This document shows positions 432 through 31,700 of a stretch of 64,000 nt of DNA, piece by piece. How positions within the stretch are numbered: position 1 is the first letter of the stretch; each line of letters opens with the position of its first letter. The position numbers and the translations under genes are program-made. The stretch comes from Aplysia californica. Taxonomy: Eukaryota. Location of the stretch: positions 2,050,317 to 2,114,316 of the forward strand of contig NW_004797308.1 in assembly GCF_000002075.1 (NCBI RefSeq). The letters are read 5' to 3'. Below the pieces are notes generated by a model. The model was not told the DNA's origin. It was given only the letters and a program-made list of their open reading frames with translations, and ran no database searches.

Positions 432-3400
432 GTAAGTTCGGGCCAGATGGGGTCGCGTACGAACATTTCCTAAAATATTCATTTTTCAAATTAAATTAGA
501 ACCAGCCCTTAAGTAAACTAGGTGCAGTGTGTTGTCAGGACTAAGTTCTCTTTTTGCTGCTATTTGTCCTTCCTAAGAAAGCTAACCTGAGTTGGCAGGT
601 GATTGGCGGGTGCTCTGGTGTGTTTTGCTCCTTCTTTCCTATCTAATATCTATTGTCTTTATTTCTCTTCTATCTTTTTTGTTGTGTTTGTTACTATCTT
701 GTAACGCCTTTTATCTTCTGCACTTATATGACCTAGTTATGTTACAAGTGCTGTGAAACACTTACAAAAACGTGGTATACTAGAACAGTATATCGACTGC
801 TTAGTCCTTCTTCTTCAATTTTTAGTATTGTTGTTGTTGTTATTATTATTATTATTATTATTATGAGAACCTTTCATTGAAGGCTTACAAGGCTCCACTC
901 TTATCACTTTACTTGGTTGAACTTTTTGATTAGATGCCAAGAAGAGTTGTGGGAAAGTTGTTGACAGGAAATCTCTGGACTTTGTTCCCTCAGGGAGCTC
1001 ATGTTGAAAGTGCTGCTGAAAATCACGTCTGGCGTCCTGAAAAAAAATCCTCCGGAAGAGAGATACCGCACCCTGGGAGGTCGTCTGGCACAGCCCATTC
1101 TGCAGGTCGGTTACGTTTGTGTTGTTGCTTGTGCTCATTTGTACTTGTGTGATTATTATGTGGCAAATGAAGAATACCTTGTTGTTTTATATGGCACACT
1201 TTTAGTAAAACTGTATGTGTCATGACGTGGTGGAATCAGGGGCTCGTCAGTTTTTGGGCATGTGGAGTTATTGCTATCATCTAAAAGCTTATTCATTTGA
1301 CTTGCTTTCAATGAATAAAATCCTCCATCGATCTTGAATAGAAGTTTAGATATTTGTGATTGAAGGAGGTGGGCTTGCCTGATTTCAGTGGTAAAATTAA
1401 TGAGAAAATGGCCGCCAAAGTTTGGTAACTTCAATAGCTTGAGAGTCCTTGAAAACTGAAAAATGAGATATTCCGTGCCTTTAATCAAAGTTTTTCAGTC
1501 CAATACACATGGACATTTTTTAATTAAATGGACTTAAAAGGTGTTGTGTGGGAAAAAAAAATTTCGATAAAAAATTACTAAACTGGTGGAAAAAATGTCG
1601 CTTCGTTTTTATTATTTTGACGAGCGCCTGATTTCACCACGATGCCTCACATATTGACTGCTTGGTTTAAGACTCTGGGGTACGCCATTTTGAAAAGTGA
1701 CGTTGAACAGAGTCTTACACTGAGCAGTGGATATACTGTCTCTAGGGACCTGATATGCCTGAAGTGTTTGTTCCCAGAGACCCTAGGTATTTTTGTTAGT
1801 TTAAAGTACAGAGTTGTCCACTTAACCAAACATGGTTAGTCTGAAAACAGCAGTAAACCAAAAGAAAATGAACTCCTTAATTATTTTTTTTTTGGGGGGG
1901 GGGGAAGGAGGGAGGAGGTTCTTCACTATTTGAGGAATCTCTAACTTTAAGCCAAAAATATGATGGCTGAACCGAAGAAAATTGGGCAGTCCTGCAGATG
2001 TTGGTTTCCACGGACTTCACTCTACTTGTCTGTCTGTCTGTGTGAGTTGTCTGTGACTGTGCCAGTGAATGAAGCCAGAAGTGTATTATGTTATGTAGAT
2101 AAATACACTTCGTCATCTGGCACAAAAAGTAAACTGACTTTGCCACGGTGCCGCTTTCAGTCCAGCTGTGCATCGGCCGAGGGGTCAGACATTTCCTGTT
2201 TCTCTCTTTTTACTCTGTGTTACCCCTACATAATATGTTTATTGAATGTGGGTAGTTGGCGGGTGCTGTAGTGTAGTTTGCTCCTTCTTTCTTATCCAAC
2301 AAACATCTGTTGTCCTTTTCTCTCCTCCTCCTTTTCTTTGTGTTTAAGTAACAGCTCTACTATTTGGCATATATATGTCCTATATGTGCTGCAAGTCCTG
2401 TAGAATTCTTATTGTCTTTTTTCTATGTACAAACATATATATTTTCTCGTATATCTTACTCTCCAGTAACACCTGGAATCTTTGGCACTTATATGACCTT
2501 ATTGTATTGCAAGTGCCGTAAAACGCTTATTAAAACCAACCCCCAGACGCTGATCGTGACGTGGACGAAGGCCAACCTGAACGTGCTGGTGACGGCCTCG
2601 CTGTGGGACGAGTTCCTGGCCGTCCTCTCCTCCCTCACCTCCTGGAAGGAGTTGATCCACGAGTGGTCGGTACGGAATTATGATAAAAATATTAATAATA
2701 ATAGTAATAAATAGCTTTGTATAGCGCATAACCCTGCTCAACAGCAAGCTCTATGGGCTTCACAATCTATACTATTACCCCAGCAGACCGGAGAGCATTC
2801 GGAAACAACCTCAACTTCCTGGGAAGCATACAGTGCAAGCAGCTGATTGAGCGCTCAAACACTAACAAATTGACAAGGTCTTTCGCTCTCTATAGCTGGG
2901 TACCCCTTCCCACCTGGGTGAAGTGAGGAAAATTCGTGTAAAGTGCATTTCCCCAAGGACACAACGTCGGGCCCCTGACAGGATTCGAACCCATGACCAT
3001 ACGGTTGCGATTCTAAGAGCCTAACCACTAGGTCACCGACGCCAAACGTGCTCATGGGTTTTTTTCTACGCTGTGTCCAAGTTTTGATGGTCTATAAATT
3101 CTTCTCTGTGTGAAATGTGCAAGAGTTAAGTTTTACACCCCTACACCCCCTCACTTTTGACAACTTTCGTTCCATTCTCTCCTCCCTCACTTCCTGGAAG
3201 GAGTTGATTCACGAGTGGTCGGTATGTGCTCACAGGTTTTTTTTCTACACTGTGTCCAAAGTTTGATGGTCTATTCTTCACCATTCATGTAAAATTGGTA
3301 AGAGTAAAGTTTAACACCCCCCAACCCCTTGCTGTTTGACGAATGCCTTTCATTTCTTACCTCCCTTACTTCTCGGAATGAGTTGATGCATGAGTTGTCG

Positions 3401-6400
3401 GTACATATACGCACTGGTTTTTGTACACGCTTTGTGGGGTTCTTTCCAAGACGTCATGTGTCCAAGACGTCATGTGTCCAAGACGTCATGTGTCCAAGAC
3501 GTCATGTGTCCAAGACGTCATGTGTCCAAGATGTCATGTGTCCAAGACGTCATGTGTCCAAGACGTCATGTGTCCAAGATGTCATGTGTCCAAGACGTCA
3601 TGTGGGTAAAAGTAAAGTTTAACAGATGTTATCATGATAGGGGCATTACACCCACACATGTGCCAGTTTGACTTCTGTTTTAGCCCTTCATCTATGTTCT
3701 ACTTGTGCTGCTGTGTGACATTTCCCAGAAAACTATGGAGACGCTGACCCGTGTGTTGGCCAGACAGGTGTACGGCCTTGACCTGAATGACCTCCCCCTG
3801 GAGAGACTGAGCGAACAGAAGGAGAAGAGGAGGAGAGGAAGAGGTAACGGGAGTCCTTGCTTAAATTTTCTCTGTGGCAAAATAGTACCGCTCACTGTAC
3901 TTCAAATAAGGTGAAACCCATTTTTCATCTTCTAGTATGATTATTTGTAAAAAATCATAATAAAAAAAAAAAGAACAGTTAAGGTTTTAGGAAAAATTTC
4001 CAACTTTAACTGTTCTTTTTCTTGTTTAAAAAATAATTTGAGTGGCTCATGTGATGCACTCAGGAGACCTGACTTTCTCATCTAAACAGTTGTGAATGTG
4101 GATAAAACTTTGTATGGAGATTTTTAAAGGGAAGCTGCACTCCTTTGTGTTTATGTCTGTTCTTTGTCTTGAGTCGAGTTGGGGAAAAAAATAATTTCGT
4201 GAAACTGTGGAAATCAATTCTTGGGGGAATGAGTAAACAAATGTCATTCTTTCTGCGTGTGCAGAATCGACCAAAGGCAAGCCCTCCTCCTCCACCACCA
4301 CCTCCACCTCGGCCAAAGCCGTCCCTCGCTTGGACAAGAGTTTTTCCCGTGGCCTGAGCGGCAGCGACGGACATCCCATCAACCCGCTGCGCAGCTCCAC
4401 CAACAGCGCCCCCTCCCCCGAGACCTCGGCCTCCTTCGACCGGGGGACCAAGTACAAGAGTGATGGTCAGTGCCCGGTCAACCTGGTCAAACTAAGCCGG
4501 ACGTTGAAGGGGTTTGGGTACCTGGTCAACCTGGTCAAACTAAGCCGGACGTTGAAGGGGTTTGGGTACCTGGTCAACCTGGTCAAACTAAGCCGGACGT
4601 TGAAGGGGTTTGGGTACCCGGTCAACCTGGTCAAACTAAGCCGGACGTTGAAGGGGTTTGGGTACCTGGTCAAACTAAGCCGGACGTTGAAGGGGTTTGG
4701 GTACCTGGTCAAACTAAGCCGGACGTTGAAGGGGTTTGGGTTCCTGGTCAACCTGGTCAAACTAAGCCAGACGTTGAAGGGGTTTGGGTACCCGGTCAAC
4801 CTGGTCAAACTAAGCCGGACGTTGAAGGGGTTTGGGTTCCTGGTCAACCTGGTCAAACTAAGCCAGACGTTGAAGGGGTTTGGGTTCCGCATTTAAAAAA
4901 TCTCAAGACGACGGTCTAAAATGGAGATATAATTTTTGTCCGAAACTGTTGTTGAATCATTTAATTAACTGGAAATATTGAAGGTTTAAGAAATAAAGCA
5001 GTAGTTTTGACGTAATACTACTTTTACTTTGGTGACTTACAATAGGCCTTTTCACTTCGCTTGGTACCATAAAAGATTGTAGATCCAAGGATGTCTGAGA
5101 ACTCTACGAGACAGTATCGTACTAATTAAGTCAAATAGATTGTAGATCCAAGGATGTCTGAGAACTCTACGAGACAGTATCATACTAGTTAAGTCAAATA
5201 GATTGTAGATCCAAGGATGTCTGAGAACTCTACGAGACGGTATCATACTAGTTAAGTCAAATAGATTGTAGATCCAAGGATGTCTGAGAGCTCTACGAGA
5301 CAGTATCGTACTAATTAAGTCAAATAGATTGTAGATCCAAGGATGTCTGAAAACTCTAAGAGACAGTATCGTACTAATTAAGTCAAATAGATTGTAGATC
5401 CAAGGATGTCTGAGAACTCTACGAGACAGTATCGTACTAATTAAGTCAAATAGATTGTAGATCCAAGGATGTCTGAGAACTCTACGAGACAGTATCGTAC
5501 TAATTAAGTCAAATAGATTATACATGTCTAGATTTAGTCCTCATAGTTTTGTGTAACAGTAATTCATTTTTGGTATTATTTTCTGTCTGTCATATTCAGT
5601 GGGCGGAAATGTTTTTCAAAACTGAAAAACAGTGAGATATTTTAAAAGTTTGTAGAAAAATTTATAAGATGTCTGGTTGTTTTCCCGTTTTTGTCTTGAT
5701 GAGAGTGTTGATATTAAGTGGAAATTGTCCAAGATGGCCGCTCAATTTTCGTGGAGAAAAATTGTCCTCTTAGACAGGAGGGCGTCTTGGTCAGGGTAAA
5801 AATACTTGGGAGGGGGGATGGGAAGTGGCTGTTTGTACAGGTGATTGTCTTATACAGGTGGCAGTTAGAGCAGGCTAGAACAGGTTCGACCGTATTTGAA
5901 CAAGGTCCATTTTTTTTTTGGTGATACTTTAGGTGCAGGTGGAAAAGTGCGCCCGGATTTGTCCAAACAAAAGTCGTTGAGCGGGGAGCCAAGCCCGTCC
6001 CACTCGCGGTGCCCGTCCACGTCCACCGAGTGTCTGGTGCGCTCCAGCAGTGAGGGGAACATCGCCGCAGACCCACACGAGCTGCTGGAGAAACTGAGAG
6101 GTTTGTCGGAGACTTGTGATGTTTCTGGGAGACTCGCGATGTCTGTGGGAGACTTGTTATGTTTCTGGGAGACTCGCAATGTCTGACCCGACTTCCTGTT
6201 TGCTGATCTGGAAATGCGGGCAGAGCGGAACATGATAGTAGAATGTCGTCCTCATGACAAGAACGGCTGACCCAGAAAGAGTTACTTGTTCACGAGAAGC
6301 AAAAAAAAACCTTGTTGGATTCACTCTGCAGCAACCTGGCAGTCGACAGGTCGGCCAACTTTAGTTCTCACGTTGTTGGAGCATTTCTAGTCAAAATTCA

Positions 6401-25700: not shown

Positions 25701-28700
25701 CCTTCCCGAACAGGATTGACCAAGGACAAATATTCAACTTTTGGTCCTCAGATGGCTTTTCCATGCATATTGAGCTCAAGGGCCAAATTTGGTTTGCCAA
25801 CATCTGGGGTTCTTCTCACAGGCATACACACCATAGACACATTTCAGCCTCAGTAACAAATGTATTAACGGTAGTGAAAAAGCCAACATGCAACACACAC
25901 CAAGCCCTCCAATTCCATGTATCCGGGCGGGGAGTTGGGGCCGAAGAGCTCATCGAGATGAGACTGTCTCTGGGCCTGTGAGAGGGAGGAAGACACGGTT
26001 AGCACAAACTGGCATTCCACTTGTTTCAGCAGAGAGGAGGAGGAAAAATTCGGGGAAAGTACTGCTATACATAACACAAGATTAATAGAGTGAAAGAAAC
26101 ACACAATACAATTTATGAAATGGTGCTCGTTATATTTTCTGCAAATAATGACAAAAGAATAACTAAGTTGTTAATAGAAACAGTGAAATAAGATACAAGT
26201 TAAATTTTCCTTTAATTTTAGAAAGAGAACATTTTTCCAGCATGCTACACTAATTTACAGGTGTCAATCGTACTTAAACAGGTTTTTTTTTAACCCTTAA
26301 AGGAAAACAATTATCTTTAAAAAAGAAAAGAAAACAAACGATGATCAGCTAGAATTAAATACGAATGGGTGCCCCCCACCATGCCTGAAAATGTGTCTCC
26401 TTGTTAGCCTTTACAGTAGCAAAGTTTTCACGCTTGCAACAAACGAGCTCCATGCAAAATCATCATCATCACACACACACACAAGCACACATGCATGTAT
26501 GACCACTGAAAGCAACAAAGCTATGTCAGAAGAGCACACACTAGCACAACTTTCAAACGCGTTCACACAGTTTTAAGAAACCAGCTCAAGGAAAACTCAA
26601 ACATGTCAAGTGCCAAAAAAAAAAAGCCAAAAAAAAAGCGGGAAGCACATGCAAACTACTCACCCCGGGGATGGGTTGTCCAAAGGCGGTAAACGCTTTG
26701 CTGTCATGGTCCTCCACAACTAGACGTCGTATAGAGCGCTCAAGCTCATCCTATTAAAAGTAAACAAAACAATCAGTTTTTAAAAAACGGGGGGGGGGGG
26801 GGTTTCATTTTAGAACTCTCACATCTCATGATACTTAAAAAAGGGAGTTCAATAACAACTAAGCAAAGATATCGCAGAAATGTGTATTAACTAACAATGG
26901 AAAAAGGAGAGCAAGAAAGAGTCTCAAAACATATACAACCTTTGCAAGCTTCTTGCTAGTTCTGCATTCACTATCACTATTAACAAAGTGTAGCGAGCAT
27001 ATGAGTTGGTACTTGTGACCTACTGAAGTTTCAAATTTTTCAGTTAATACCAGTATTACACAGGGTTCTGTTGCTTCAAATGAGCCTGTCTTTCCAAAAC
27101 GGAGAACATGAAAAAACATTTGACTGGTCAGTAGAATTGAAGTGTACAACTTTTTCAGGTTATGGGTAAAAAGTAATTGCTGGACCATTGAAAGGCCATC
27201 TTGCTGATGCAAGGAAATTTTTTTGTGACTTTGTGGTGTTTTTCTTATCTCCTAAAGCAGGGCAAAAGGGAATTGTTTATTTTTCTTGTGACAGTGACCA
27301 TAATATATAGATTCACATATACCTGTTACACATTCAAGCAGCAGAGCAAATCACTTGTACTTGTACATAAACGCACTTATTAACACTTTGTCATTATATT
27401 TTGGGGAAAATCCAAAGAAACTGGTTGGTAAACACCGCCAATCGGCGAGATGAAGAAGCAAAGTGTTAAGACTCGAATCAGGTCAAAAAGTGAACTGGTT
27501 GAGTCTTACCTCCTGGATGGTGCTGGTTGTGGTGGACAGCCCTCGGTCCATGGTGACAAAGCCAGAGTCCCTTGTGTGGTTCTCCTCCCGTGGACTGTCG
27601 AAGAAACTGGAGCCCTCCAGCTCCTTTGCCAGCCGCTTGTGCTCATCTTCCCAGTCGTAATCAGCTGGTGGTGATATTTTTTTAGTTAAGAATTTAAGCA
27701 AAGAGAAGCACAGACACCGACACAAACAATGGTCATTCTGGGCCAAGAAAAAAAAAAGAAAAAAAGAATAGGACCTGTGAATAACACCTTCCAACTACCC
27801 TCATCTTTTATTAAGAGAAGCAGTTTGCTGATATACCAGTCGTTTAAGGGTACAAAAAAAAAAGCAAGATTGACTTCATGAGTACAAAAGTAGGACTTAC
27901 CAGGGACACCATTCAACCACCCACATAATCTGCAGGTGGCACGGCGTCCGAAATTCCGTCTCAGCGATCTTTTAGTTAGTCCGGGCCCCCCGCGGTAGGC
28001 CATAAATTAGCGGCAGGTGACCTGCAATTTCACGCGTCAAGTCGGGGATTGACCGGGGTCAACTCGTGCACAGCGCTGTCCTATCTTGTCCTTATCAGAA
28101 CGCGTTTCTTCCCCTAATTTCATGAGCCGTAAAATGATGCTCACTGTACCCCTAGAACCTATTTCTTCACCAATTCCGCTTCGTCTACGTCTTCTTGATA
28201 TCTTGTGAAAGTTTCAACAGTTTTCATTGATTCGTTTGGGAATAATAACAGTTTTAAATTGTGAGTGTTAAGTGATTGGAAGCGCCGATAATAATGTTAT
28301 CTCTTCAAATTTAATTACAAATCATTCGAGAATGGAACGATGGTCTTTATTTCTGTTTGCACGGTGTGATAGCCATCAAATCATATTTTCTAATGATGTG
28401 AATTTTGTTTTTCCAGCACTTTGCAGTGACTGGCTATCAGTTAGTGAATTGTGTTCCTAAGTAAAAATCGTTAAACTGCAATGGGCCAGTCACACATATG
28501 AGAGGCATAGAGTCTCTGAATGGACTTTGTCGGGTGTGTTGGTGTTTAAATTTAACTGTCAAACAAAAAAAAAGTGCAGAAAGCCCCGATTATGTAAGAC
28601 AATGGCAGGAGATATTCTCTTGATTTATGGGATTGATGTGAGGGACGAAAATGAACAGTCGTATTCCGCTAACATTTGTGTCAAGTGTTTTACCGCGATT

Positions 28701-31700
28701 TCAACTATCAAAGGGAGATAGGGTGTTACGTCATGTCAATTTATGCCGCAAAAAAGCAGTTGACACTAGTAGGAACATGTGGTGTGCGTTTGACAATAGC
28801 AGAAATATGAATTCCTTCTCCGTTTTGTTGGTACCGCTTAGGTGGCTGCATACAAAGATCAATTTCAAGCTAACATCGTAAAACACCCCAAACATACCTC
28901 CCTCCATCCCCATGTATGCAAGGAACTAACAAACACAATTTGTACAGAAACAAGAAAATACTCCGTCGAAACTGCAAAAATTGAGGAGGCAAAAGGAATG
29001 GAAGCAATATTCAATCTTCTCAATGAAAGATTTAGCCATGTTCACACTGCAATATCAAATCTCAAACCAGTCGAACGATTTTCAGTTCCACAAATCTTCT
29101 TAGCAATCGACAATTACATGTCCGCATTCAGACGCTATTTCCCCGCAAAGTTATCCCAAAGCCACACATATCATAACAACACTGTATTCCACACATACAA
29201 CAACACATGTTTGCTCTCGGGCTTTTAGGAGAACAGGACACAGAAAGCAGTCACCAAGTGATCTCAAAACTGGAAGCCAGAGTATGAAGGATCCCAAACC
29301 AGATAGACATAATGCGTTTTTATTTTTGTGTCGCATCTCCTGCAAATAGCTCCCTCATTGCGTGCTGCTGGATATGTTTAGAAAGAAAAATTGTATAAAT
29401 GTATACTTTTATTCTGTACATGTTCATTTCGTGAAAAGAAATCGGTGCTGTATATTGAAGATACGTCAGTATATCATTATTCAGGAGGATACACAATCCA
29501 TTGGATACAAAAAGTCATGAATGCAGTGAAGCGTTTTGGCTATCATGCTCATGACAAGTTCCATGTTCGTGCTGGAAACAAAATTTTGAGTGAGTCAATT
29601 TCTAAACACATTTTCCTGTCTTACGTGGCAGTTTTGTAAATATTTATCGTTAGGCTTATAAGTTATTAGCCATTCAATATGTGTTTGTTGTTTTGACTAA
29701 CTATAAATAGACATATATTTTAAGAGCAGCTAACTCAAAAACGTGAGCAGCCATGGTATTGCTATTTCGTACCAATAAAGAGGTTTAGTTGCTTTCTCTA
29801 AAGAACAAACTTGTGTTCACGTATGATATTTTTTGTTTGTGTAAGACGATAAAACATGTGTTGAAAAATTCATTTCACCGGCTACCGACGCAGGTAGCGG
29901 GAGGGCAGGTTAGTGACCTCTGGGTGACCGGCCCGCTGTGACCCGGTCACTCCATCGCCGATCCAACTAAAAGAGCGCTGTCTGTACGCCGTGGTGGGTA
30001 TGCCAAGACAAAACTAAAACACTACGTAAAATACTTCTATGGTGCTTTTTGTAAAAACTCTACTTTGAATAGCAGCAACTTAACCCCAAAATTAAGTCTA
30101 ATAAGTCAAAAAGAGGCCAACCATAAAATGAAGAATGCAACATTTCAGTTCTGCCCTGCACCCCAAATTGGTGAAAATAATTTTTTTAATCTGATGCATG
30201 AATTTATTTATTTACATGCTACATCAAGTCTCTTCCAACTTCCACAGGGAAAACACTTTCTCATTGTAATAACAAAAATGAGCAACTCCATTCAACCTTG
30301 TTTCACTAGGTAAGCAAAAGTCATTGGAGTTATTTTTCTTGCCACAGGGACAACTTCGTCCCTTAAACAGTACACAAGGCTATAGCTGAGAGGAAGATGT
30401 ATTCCTAGAAAAACAAAAACAAGCTGACCACACTCGGACTTTAACTAAGTTAAAACTTGAACTTCCTCAAGTTCATAAGTAGGGATTAAAAGCTCTGCAC
30501 CTTTACCTTAACTAAAAACTAACAGAGCAGTCATTTACACCTTAAATTATAAGAACAAGACAAATTGAATCCCACAACACTGGACAGTCCCAAGGGTAAA
30601 GAACATATATATATGCATAAATGCAAACTTTCCAAAACAAAAAAAAACAAAAATTTAACCCACGCGGCAGGTCAAGATGATGGGCACTGACCAAAAAGCC
30701 GACCTTCAAACACTCCCTACACACTTTTCTAAATCCAACAAAAGCAACCTATTCAAAGTAGACATCTGCAAAAGGTCTCTCAAATTTAGTTACAGGCTCC
30801 AGTCACATTATTATCTGCAAATCTAGTCTTGAAAAGTTCATAATTTTTTCCAGCATCAGCAAGTCCATGAGGAGCATAGCTTGAGAACACAGAGTTTGTA
30901 TTTTCCAACATGAAAACTGCATTCAAATTTAATTTCTCAAAGCTCTCAGTAAAAAAAAAAAAAAACAAGTCACAAAGAAGAATTAAATATATCAAATGAA
31001 AAAACAGCCCAACAGTACATAAAAAACAAGAAGATGCAGGACAAACAATTTAGGAAAATGACAGCGACAAAATATAAGTTACCATCTCCAAGATCACCAA
31101 AAGTTTCATCGTTCAAAATATCAAATTCCTCTTCTTCTTCAGGAGCTTGAATCAGCTGATTGATGTCCTCATCAAGCTTTCCTGCTCCAAGAGCCTGCAC
31201 CAACAAACAAAAGATAAAGAATACAACAATATAATATAGTATATATATCATGGCCTCAGACCTCGGCTCGTTCAATCATTCATGGTAGTGACATAAAAAA
31301 ATTTATTTTAAAATGTATATATAACATTAAATTAATTAACAACTGCTCATGGGAGAATCAATTTTCCATCAATAAAGGAAACACTCTGGTCTATAACCTT
31401 ACATGGCATCATAATAAACTCTGTCAAATACTATACAAGAGTGCACAGCTATAACACTTGAGATTGTTTTTGACAGAACTGTACAGATATTGTGAGAAGT
31501 CTGCCACTGCTATTTCAGCGAAAGAAGTAGTAGTACTGGACAAATGAGAACAAGTTGGGAAGTTAAATGATGATAAAACAGTTCAGAAGCCATTCTGGCA
31601 AGCAGTGAGAAAGCCAGAACAAGTGATGTGATGGAAAAAATATCTCTATGATGATTAGAGGCGGTACTTTTACTTTCTAAGAAAGAAAAGAACATTGGAG

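What the first reader, a model, noticed from the sequence alone, without database searches (positions are those of the whole stretch)
27936..29997. Chapaev/RAG1-related transposon with bipartite, asymmetric (RSS-like) terminal repeats
Seen: the left end reads CACGGCGT-[14 bp CCGAAATTCCGTCT]-CAGCGATCTTTTAGTT; the right end (reverse complement) reads CACGGCGT-[5 bp ACAGA]-CAGCGCTCTTTTAGTT; both are flanked by a 4-bp GTGG duplication. The two ends therefore share a terminal CAC 8-mer and an inner 16-mer (15/16 identical), separated by unrelated spacers that differ by 9 bp, close to one helical turn. Established: V(D)J RSSs are a CAC heptamer and a nonamer with 12/23 spacers; Chapaev transposases (CAC ends, 4-bp TSD) carry an N-terminal Zn motif shared with the RAG1 non-core region; RAG1-N-related elements are known from molluscs. 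Inference: this family may pair unequal ends in a 12/23-like way, and this copy was still transposed after the asymmetry arose (TSD intact).
Basis: partly seen in the sequence, partly recalled or inferred. Interest (0 to 1): 0.8.

Follow-up and report, generated by a model that had tools for sequence, protein, structure and literature searches.

The report
Chapaev transposon with unequal RSS-like ends
This is a gutted copy of a known cut-and-paste jumping gene (Chapaev group) whose full-length relatives encode an enzyme folded like RAG1, and whose two ends carry an inner signal about one DNA turn further in at one end than at the other, a layout also seen in related elements of other snails and a sponge.

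Summary
A 2,054-bp element lies at window 27940-29993, flanked by a GTGG duplication. Both ends start with CACGGCGT and carry an inner TTTTAGTT word, 22 nt further in on the left and 13 nt on the right.

It is one of at least 40 copies, 90-99% identical. 24 of 27 full copies have their own perfect 4-bp duplication. It is an internal-deletion derivative of a 3.8-kb element.

Full-length relatives encode a transposase of about 900 aa:
- The predicted core superposes on the RAG1 core (Z 25, about 455 residues, rmsd 3.4 A), ahead of HzTransib.

The unequal spacing is not private to this copy. It recurs in a second Aplysia family (about 240 copies or more), in five other elements (Littorina, Haliotis and three copies from two unnamed assemblies) and in a sponge element, with transposases 27-57% identical. 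The TTAG core of the inner word starts 22-24 nt from one tip and 32-34 nt from the other.

Pairing of unlike ends, as in the 12/23 rule, remains an untested inference. Asymmetric ends are already published for Transib and RAG-like transposons; I found no report for Chapaev. Two earlier notes of this scan recorded the same layout on other copies.

The parts
27936..27939 (+). left copy of the 4-bp target-site duplication (GTGG)
   Evidence: 24 of 27 family copies have their own perfect 4-bp TSD
27940..27947 (+). left tip, CACGGCGT (heptamer-like CAC end)
   Evidence: every genomic match begins here
27948..27969 (+). long spacer, 22 nt, between the tip 8-mer and the inner TTTTAGTT word
   Evidence: the long side is 22-24 nt in the other families
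   Evidence: longest word shared by the two ends, reached by 1 of 500 shuffles
27940..28839 (+). 5' part of the element, homologous to positions 1-883 of the 3.8-kb relative L031 (83% identity)
28498..28721 (+). frameshifted remnant of the N-terminal zinc (Chapa / RAG1-NZD-like) domain
   Evidence: one search lists the ORFs; 72% identical to the L031 N-terminal ORF; a profile that includes that ORF matches mouse RAG1 NZD 21wb_A at E 2.4e-8
28840..28900 (.). deletion junction: about 1.86 kb of the transposase gene (L031 element 884-2745) is missing
28901..29993 (+). 3' part of the element, homologous to L031 element 2746-3808 (89% identity)
28842..29228 (+). remnant ORF of the transposase C-terminal region
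   Evidence: 72% identical to residues 353-439 of the 514-aa L031 ORF
28018..28061 (.). subterminal TGACC/GGTCA half-sites, left side; function unknown
29914..29949 (.). subterminal TGACC/GGTCA half-sites, right side; function unknown
29965..29972 (-). inner word of the right end (AACTAAAA on the + strand)
29973..29985 (-). short spacer, 13 nt
   Evidence: 13 nt in six of the seven other elements with both ends read, 14 nt in Haliotis and 12 nt in the sponge
29986..29993 (-). right tip, ACGCCGTG (reverse complement of CACGGCGT)
29994..29997 (+). right copy of the 4-bp target-site duplication (GTGG)

Best explanation
Window 27940-29993 is a non-autonomous, internally deleted copy of a Chapaev-group DNA transposon. 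The genome is probably Aplysia californica. The copy was moved in trans by a transposase of about 900 aa. [quoted passage not shown]

Each end is bipartite: a CAC tip where cleavage occurs, and an inner (C/T)TTTAG(T/C)T word. The inner word lies about one helical turn (9-11 bp) further from the tip at one end than at the other.

Shown here: the anatomy, the copy family, the 4-bp TSDs, the deletion, the domain homology, the fold, and conservation of the long/short geometry across families.

Inferred: the inner word is a transposase-binding site, read by the helical module, and the unequal spacing makes the enzyme synapse one long with one short end, as RAG does with 12- and 23-RSS. Also inferred: cleavage proceeds by nick and hairpin as in RAG and Transib, with a 4-bp staggered integration.
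For: Anatomy and copies:
- The coordinates are as described.
- There are at least 40 copies at 90-99% identity, all ending at the CAC...GTG tips.
- 24 of 27 full copies have perfect, all-different 4-bp TSDs without a consensus.
- All 79 ends found by pattern have spacer 14 or 5 and no other length; the reversed control found none.
- The copy is a deletion derivative of a 3.8-kb element.

Protein:
- Pfam DUF1280 matches the core.
- The N-terminal profile matches mouse RAG1 NZD 21wb_A at E 2.4e-8 and RAG1 residues 100-223 at E 5e-5. RAG1_imp_bd is hit by 6 of 11 members and zf-AD by 5 of 11.
- The AlphaFold2 model of P0007 has pLDDT above 80 from residue 205.
- The listed Foldseek hits with E <= 0.001 (49 in all) are RAG1, BbRAGL or HzTransib; the best is E 2.8e-16.
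- VIA-align gives Z 25, with model 324-888 on RAG1 459-1005, rmsd 3.3-3.5 A over about 455 residues. HzTransib scores 22.6, P element 11.5 and Hermes 7.5.
- Invariant or near-invariant D439, D510, C529, C532, H818, H823, E840 and E844 in 48 homologs.

Geometry, as the 0-based start of TTAG, long end / short end:
- window copy 32/23; L031 32/23
- second Aplysia family 33/23, with 475 right ends and at least 20 left/right pairs about 1.59 kb apart
- L042 33/23; L050 34/23; Littorina 33/23; Haliotis 33/24; L049 33/23
- sponge Ephydatia 33/22, where a shared 13-mer was reached by 0 of 500 shuffles
- A test that does not presuppose the motif (longest word shared by the two ends) picks the TTAG word in 6 of 9 elements, with offset differences of 9, 9, 10, 11, 10 and -11.
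Against: - No experiment shows that unlike ends must pair. All copies of a family inherit their ends by descent, so the absence of long/long or short/short elements says nothing.
- In Haliotis and L049 the shared inner word is only a 6-mer, and other chance-level 7-mers are longer.
- The candidate sea-urchin element has the word only at its long end. No ends were found for L052.
- The module in the place of the nonamer-binding domain matches the RAG1 NBD only weakly when folded alone: Foldseek finds nothing significant, and VIA-align gives Z 4.0, rank 2 of 48,161 chains.
- The inner word is T-rich on the strand where the RSS nonamer is A-rich, so there is no sequence homology to the nonamer.
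- Ends outside Aplysia come from single copies. They are defined by tip identity plus TSD, not by copy alignment.
- A sequence profile of the core does not detect RAG1; the relation is visible only at fold level.
Confidence: 0.7

Rival explanations
1. The ends are truly asymmetric and conserved, but not for a pairing rule. Each end is bound independently, and the different spacing only marks left versus right. It might set the order of cleavage or the orientation of the complex, as is thought for piggyBac and the P element.
For: The geometry is conserved, but nothing here addresses synapsis. From my own knowledge, piggyBac and P element ends also have unequal spacers without a strict RAG-type rule.
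Against: The enzyme has the RAG1 fold. The length difference is 9-11 bp, one helical turn, the value that RAG and RAG-like transposons use (PMC10462144, PMC9435367).
Confidence: 0.2
2. The extra 9-11 bp at one end serve expression of the element, for example a promoter or leader element at the 5' end, and have nothing to do with the transposase.
For: In all gastropod elements with a gene, the long end lies upstream of the transposase gene.
Against: In the sponge element the long end lies downstream of the gene. The extra sequence is not conserved between families, only its length is. Non-autonomous families without a gene keep it in hundreds of copies.
Confidence: 0.05
3. The asymmetry is a neutral indel that the transposase tolerates, and the cross-family pattern comes from ends wrongly called on single copies.
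For: Within the window's lineage the difference does read as one 9-bp indel. Ends outside Aplysia rest on single copies. A tip match with one mismatch plus a TSD is expected about 0.4 times per locus by chance (my estimate).
Against: Two independent multi-copy Aplysia families show it. Four single-copy calls have 11-13 nt of tip identity plus a TSD. The short-side offset is 22-24 in all nine elements, although the spacer sequences cannot be aligned.
Confidence: 0.05

Closest known systems
Chapaev DNA transposons (Kapitonov and Jurka 2007; placed in the CMC group, or in the Transib superfamily by PMC4411706), including N-RAG-TP of Aplysia californica (cited in PMC8355894)
   Same: CAC...GTG tips and a 3-4-bp TSD (PMC4079192). 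An N-terminal Chapa zinc domain related to the RAG1 N-terminus (PMC4411706; preprint 10.64898/2026.01.24.700457). A DDE core with CxxC and HxxxxH motifs. All of these were met here.
   Different: I found no paper that describes unequal spacing of an inner word in Chapaev ends.
Transib and RAG-like (RAGL-A/B, ProtoRAG, AanRAGL) transposons, and the V(D)J RSS 12/23 pair
   Same: The transposase has the same fold (Z 22-25). The tips are CAC heptamer-like. A second conserved element sits further in, with a length asymmetry of about 10 bp. This is reported for several Transib families (PMC1131882), for subgroup I Transibs and AanRAGL with 4/13-bp spacers (PMC9435367), and for PflRAGL-A (PMC10462144).
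   Different: The TSD is 4 bp, not 5 bp. The inner word is T-rich (TTTAGTT), not an A-rich nonamer. There is no RAG2-like partner gene in the elements seen. The core is not detectable by sequence profile. The Chapa domain is present, which Transib lacks. The NBD-like module has a conserved (K/A)PRK rather than GRPR/K, and its match is weak.
piggyBac and P element ends (from my own knowledge, not tested here)
   Same: Bipartite ends in which a terminal repeat and an internal binding site are separated by different spacers at the two ends.
   Different: Those enzymes have unrelated or only distantly related folds (P element Z 11.5). Their spacer differences are not one helical turn.

Membership tests
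Chapaev group of DNA transposons | 5'-CAC ... GTG-3' termini | tested here: met
   all copies
Chapaev group of DNA transposons | target-site duplication of 3-4 bp (PMC4079192) | tested here: met
   4 bp, perfect in 24 of 27 copies, no consensus
Chapaev group of DNA transposons | N-terminal Chapa zinc domain related to the RAG1 N-terminus | tested here: met
   The profile of 11 N-termini, including the cognate L031 ORF, matches 21wb_A (mouse RAG1 NZD) at E 2.4e-8. The window keeps a frameshifted remnant.
Chapaev group of DNA transposons | DDE transposase with CxxC and H(3-4)H motifs | tested here: met
   Conserved D439, D510, C529, C532, H818, H823 and E840/E844 in 48 relatives. The window copy itself has lost this region.
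Chapaev group of DNA transposons | groups with Repbase Chapaev references in a transposase tree | not testable with these tools
   No Repbase or RepeatPeps sequences were at hand.
Chapaev3 subgroup | 3-bp TWA target-site duplication between A and T (PMC4079192) | tested here: not met
   The TSD is 4 bp and of varied sequence.
Transib superfamily in the narrow sense | 5-bp target-site duplication | tested here: not met
   4 bp
Transib / RAG1 fold | core superposes on the RAG1 and HzTransib catalytic core | tested here: met
   Z 25 to RAG1 and Z 22.6 to HzTransib over 400-460 residues at rmsd about 3.5 A; Foldseek E 2.8e-16
RSS-type (12/23) recombination signals | CAC heptamer-like tip plus a second conserved element further in | tested here: met
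RSS-type (12/23) recombination signals | the two signals differ in spacer length by about one helical turn | tested here: met
   The difference is 9-11 bp in nine elements with transposases 27-57% identical.
RSS-type (12/23) recombination signals | efficient reaction only between unlike signals | not testable with these tools
   This needs a cleavage or transposition assay.
RSS-type (12/23) recombination signals | nonamer-binding domain with a GRPR/K motif in the enzyme | tested here: inconclusive
   In the whole model, residues 259-323 align to RAG1 391-459. Folded alone, RAG1 NBD 3gnb_A is rank 2 of 48,161 chains but only Z 4.0, and Foldseek finds nothing significant. The conserved motif is (K/A)PRK.
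N-RAG-TP (Panchin and Moroz 2008) | sequence identity with the published element | not testable with these tools
   The paper and its sequence are not in the library; it is known here only through PMC8355894.

The most novel reading that the evidence does not exclude
A 12/23-type geometry is ancestral to the whole RAG1-fold transposase superfamily and predates the split of Chapaev from Transib and RAG-like elements. The geometry consists of a CAC tip plus an inner word placed one helical turn further in at one end, read by a dimeric helical module in front of the core. Chapaev elements from sponge to gastropods would still use it with a 4-bp stagger. The 12/23 rule would then be an inherited transposon synapsis device, far older than the RAG2 partnership.
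Probability: 0.3. Interest if true: 0.8.

Novelty: new variant of a known kind. Interest (0 to 1): 0.6.

Why it matters
How and when the 12/23 rule arose is an open question in the evolution of V(D)J recombination. Recent papers (PMC9435367, PMC10462144) argue that asymmetric ends were already present in Transib and early RAG-like transposons. Chapaev is the nearest outgroup that shares both the RAG1-like core fold and the RAG1 N-terminal zinc domain.

A conserved long/short layout in Chapaev ends, from a sponge to sea slugs, would extend that argument one branch deeper. It also offers a simple single-protein system without RAG2, with hundreds of recent copies and apparently intact transposase genes in the same genome. 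In such a system the need for unlike ends can be tested directly.

The copy in the window is itself an ordinary dead element.

Tried and rejected
The ends of those families are unknown.
- The P0011 contigs stop before the element ends.
- The Plakobranchus locus L043 has a 4.3-kb gap; only a candidate long end was seen.
- P0114, the relative with the Pfam RAG1_imp_bd hit, gave no DNA. P0038 is not on record.
- L052 (Chapa + RING + core) gave no convincing ends.
- The Lytechinus candidate (9 kb) has the inner word at one end only, so I do not count it.
- A sequence profile of the core finds no RAG1 in the PDB.
- Foldseek on the isolated NBD-like module finds nothing significant.
- I looked for an empty-site allele in four public runs. 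Contigs reach into the element from the left flank in two runs (X1, X5) and from the right flank in three (X1, X5, X8). None skips the element, so no insertion polymorphism was seen.
- My first TSD script, which used a fuzzy match with indels, overran the tips and gave false mismatches. One search replaces it.
- Chapaev3 membership was rejected on TSD length and sequence.
Full report
**Observation**

- Left side: GTGG at 27936-27939, CACGGCGT at 27940-27947, a 14-nt stretch, then the 16-mer at 27962-27977.
- Right side: the reverse complement of the 16-mer (15 of 16 identical) at 29965-29980, TCTGT, ACGCCGTG at 29986-29993, and GTGG at 29994-29997.
- The conserved heart of the 16-mer is TTTTAGTT. 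It lies 22 nt from the tip 8-mer on the left and 13 nt on the right.

**A real, recently active family**

- A DNA search of the window's own genome (927,310,431 bases in 4,332 contigs) returned 42 matches. Thirty-nine are near-full-length copies at 90-100% identity. Nearly all begin at query base 5 and end at base 2058, the CAC and GTG tips.
- The genome is probably Aplysia californica. The size and contig count fit my memory of that assembly, and an Aplysia protein is among the homologs. I did not verify this.
- Of 27 full copies read, 24 have a perfect 4-bp duplication. Each is different and there is no consensus.
- A genome-wide pattern of tip 8-mer, 0-30 free bases, then the 16-mer found 79 ends and none in the reversed control. 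Only two spacer lengths occur: 14 with the A variant of the 16-mer, and 5 with the C variant.
- Sister subfamilies of 1.2-3.8 kb keep the 14/5 layout. Their short spacers (ACAAA, CCAAA, CCGAA) grade into the first 5 nt of the long spacer. Within this lineage the difference is therefore a 9-bp indel, not two unrelated spacers.

**What this copy is**

- One relative, L031 (G000 C19, 3,808 bp, TSD CTTA), still carries the gene in three frameshifted pieces of 145, 278 and 514 aa. The run of N in that locus lies outside the element.
- The window copy aligns to it over element positions 1-900 (83% identity) and 962-2054 (89% identity). About 1.86 kb of the gene is missing.
- What remains is a frameshifted piece of the N-terminal zinc domain (28498-28721, 72% identical to L031) and a C-terminal piece (28842-29228, 72% identical).
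- No intact cognate transposase was found. The next best loci are only 41-56% identical, although some have open frames of 906-941 aa.

**The enzyme**

- The 514-aa piece hits only Pfam DUF1280. It has 118 homologs, mostly from molluscs (Plakobranchus, Haliotis, Littorina), plus echinoderms, a sea anemone and a sponge.
- Full-length homologs are about 830-900 aa. Some carry the Pfam RAG1_imp_bd domain, and one has a RING finger in front of the core.
[quoted passage not shown] Taken singly, 6 of 11 hit RAG1_imp_bd and 5 of 11 hit zf-AD. This agrees with the preprint 10.64898/2026.01.24.700457 on Chapa domains.
- An AlphaFold2 model of the 888-aa P0007, built on 48 homologs, is confident from residue 205 onward.
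- The listed Foldseek hits with E <= 0.001 (49 in all) are RAG1, amphioxus RAGL or HzTransib; the best is E 2.8e-16.
- VIA-align gives Z 25 to RAG1: model 324-888 on RAG1 459-1005, about 455 residues at rmsd 3.3-3.5 A. HzTransib scores 22.6, P element transposase 11.5 and Hermes 7.5.
- The alignment shows conserved D439, D510, C529-x2-C532, H818-x4-H823 and E840/E844. From my knowledge of RAG1 (D600, D708, C727/C730, H937/H942, E962), the order is the same, and the second D lies 19 residues before the first Cys in both.
- A sequence profile of the core does not find RAG1, so the relation is visible at fold level only.

**An NBD-like module?**

- With RAG1 chains that include the nonamer-binding domain, the alignment extends to model 259-323 on RAG1 391-459.
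- Folded alone (pLDDT 90), this three-helix module gives no significant Foldseek hit.
- In the Foldseek-independent search, the RAG1 nonamer-binding domain crystal structure 3gnb_A ranks second of 48,161 chains, but only at Z 4.0. Model residues 59-116 align to RAG1 393-456.
- The residue aligned to RAG1 R393 is the near-invariant arginine of a (K/A)PRK motif.
- I rate this as suggestive, not shown.

**Is the asymmetry a family trait or a private indel?**

I located element ends in other families using only tip identity plus a 4-bp TSD around the gene, and then asked where the inner word lies. The table gives the 0-based start of the TTAG core at each end.

| Element | Long end | Short end | Notes |
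|---|---|---|---|
| Window copy | 32 | 23 | |
| L031 | 32 | 23 | same lineage as the window copy |
| Second Aplysia family (about 1.59 kb) | 33 | 23 | 374 pattern matches at the tip 8-mer, mostly its long ends; 475 right-end matches; at least 20 left/right pairs by coordinates |
| L042, an unnamed ENA assembly | 33 | 23 | transposase P0007, 52% identical; TSD ATTA |
| L050, same assembly | 34 | 23 | TSD AATG |
| Littorina saxatilis L048 | 33 | 23 | 37% identical; 13-nt identical tips; TSD TACG |
| Haliotis asinina L051 | 33 | 24 | 38% identical; 12-nt identical tips; TSD AGAT |
| L049, another unnamed ENA assembly | 33 | 23 | 38% identical; TSD AACA |
| Sponge Ephydatia muelleri L054 | 33 | 22 | 27% identical; TSD CCTA; shared 13-mer at offsets 15 and 26 |

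- In the gastropod elements the long end lies upstream of the gene. In the sponge it lies downstream.
- A test that does not presuppose the motif takes the longest word shared by the two ends beyond position 13. It picks the TTAG word in 6 of 9 elements, with offset differences of 9, 9, 10, 11, 10 and -11. It is beaten by 0-8 of 500 shuffles in five of them and by 58 of 500 in L050.
- In Haliotis and L049 the shared word is only a 6-mer.
- The sea-urchin candidate has it at one end only and is not counted.
- Spacer sequences cannot be aligned between families. Only the lengths are kept: 12-14 nt and 22-24 nt between the 8-mers.
- If the inner element is taken as a 9-10-mer ending in TTTAGTT and the tip as a heptamer, these are close to 12 and 21-23. 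This count depends on where one draws the motif borders.

**Comparison with what is known**

- Chapaev elements are defined by CAC...GTG tips, 3-4-bp TSDs and a DDE enzyme of the CMC type (PMC4079192). They carry the Chapa domain shared with RAG1, and Kapitonov and Koonin place them inside the Transib superfamily (PMC4411706).
- An Aplysia element with a RAG1-N-like sequence, N-RAG-TP, is on record (cited in PMC8355894).
- Chapaev3 is excluded by its 3-bp TWA duplication.
- Asymmetric ends are already published for several Transib families (5' end like RSS12, 3' end like RSS23; PMC1131882), for subgroup I Transibs and an algal RAGL (PMC9435367), and for hemichordate RAGL-A with a 10-bp asymmetry and a GRPR/K nonamer-binding domain (PMC10462144).
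- My searches (readings) found no statement of such asymmetry for Chapaev.
- Two earlier notes of this scan, on other copies of the same 2-kb family, recorded the long/short layout and the RAG1-like fold. I re-derived both here. They are not independent evidence.

**Mechanism and rivals**

The best reading is that the inner word is a second transposase-binding site. On this reading the one-turn offset lets a dimeric enzyme tell the ends apart and prefer a long/short pair, as RAG does. That step is inference. The rivals are:
- asymmetry without a pairing rule
- an expression function of the extra bases, which the flipped sponge element and the gene-less families argue against
- a neutral indel combined with miscalled ends, which two multi-copy families and the constant short side argue against

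**Other checks**

Contigs from public runs reach into the element from the left flank in two runs and from the right flank in three, covering three samples. None skips it, so no presence/absence polymorphism was seen.

**Verdict**

The copy itself is an ordinary dead Chapaev element of a known kind. The notable result is that its unequal ends are a conserved property of a broad Chapaev clade whose enzyme has the RAG1 fold.

Noticed in passing
G000 genome-wide; one right end in L014 at position 477 (C31:490203-490231): A second abundant non-autonomous Chapaev family of about 1.59 kb. Its right end has 475 matches at 3 or fewer mismatches. At least 20 left/right pairs can be read from the coordinate lists. 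It has the same long/short layout (33/23).
   Followed up: partly
G000 C880:260986-263763, C379:97318-100098, C1039:201466-204183: Open frames of 906-941 aa, about 50% identical to P0008 and without stops in the matched parts. They may be intact, possibly active, autonomous Chapaev transposase genes.
   Followed up: no
window 28018-28061 and 29914-29949: Clusters of TGACC/GGTCA half-sites, partly palindromic (TGACCGGGGTCA), lie 80-120 nt inside the left tip and 45-80 nt inside the right tip. They may be further protein-binding sites.
   Followed up: no
window 27300-27521: Summed contig depth is 1,600-50,000 here against about 3-59 in the unique flank 27522-27854 in the public runs. An unrelated high-copy repeat therefore lies just upstream of the insertion.
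   Followed up: no
L042 5685-6035 and L052 3877-4929: Gene callers split the N-terminal zinc domain from the transposase. The L042 piece hits Pfam zf-AD. The L052 piece hits RAG1_imp_bd (faint) plus RING fingers, so that relative has a Chapa-RING-core architecture like the N-terminal half of RAG1.
   Followed up: partly
L054 5504-10089 (Ephydatia muelleri): In the sponge element the short end lies upstream of the gene and the long end downstream. This is the reverse of all gastropod elements seen, and the same orientation that PMC1131882 reports for some Transib families.
   Followed up: partly
L031 731-3426: The only close autonomous relative of the window's family has two frameshifts splitting the gene into 145, 278 and 514 aa. 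Copies up to 99% identical to the window copy nevertheless exist. The source of the transposase for the recent burst is unexplained; it may be cross-mobilisation or an unassembled master copy.
   Followed up: partly
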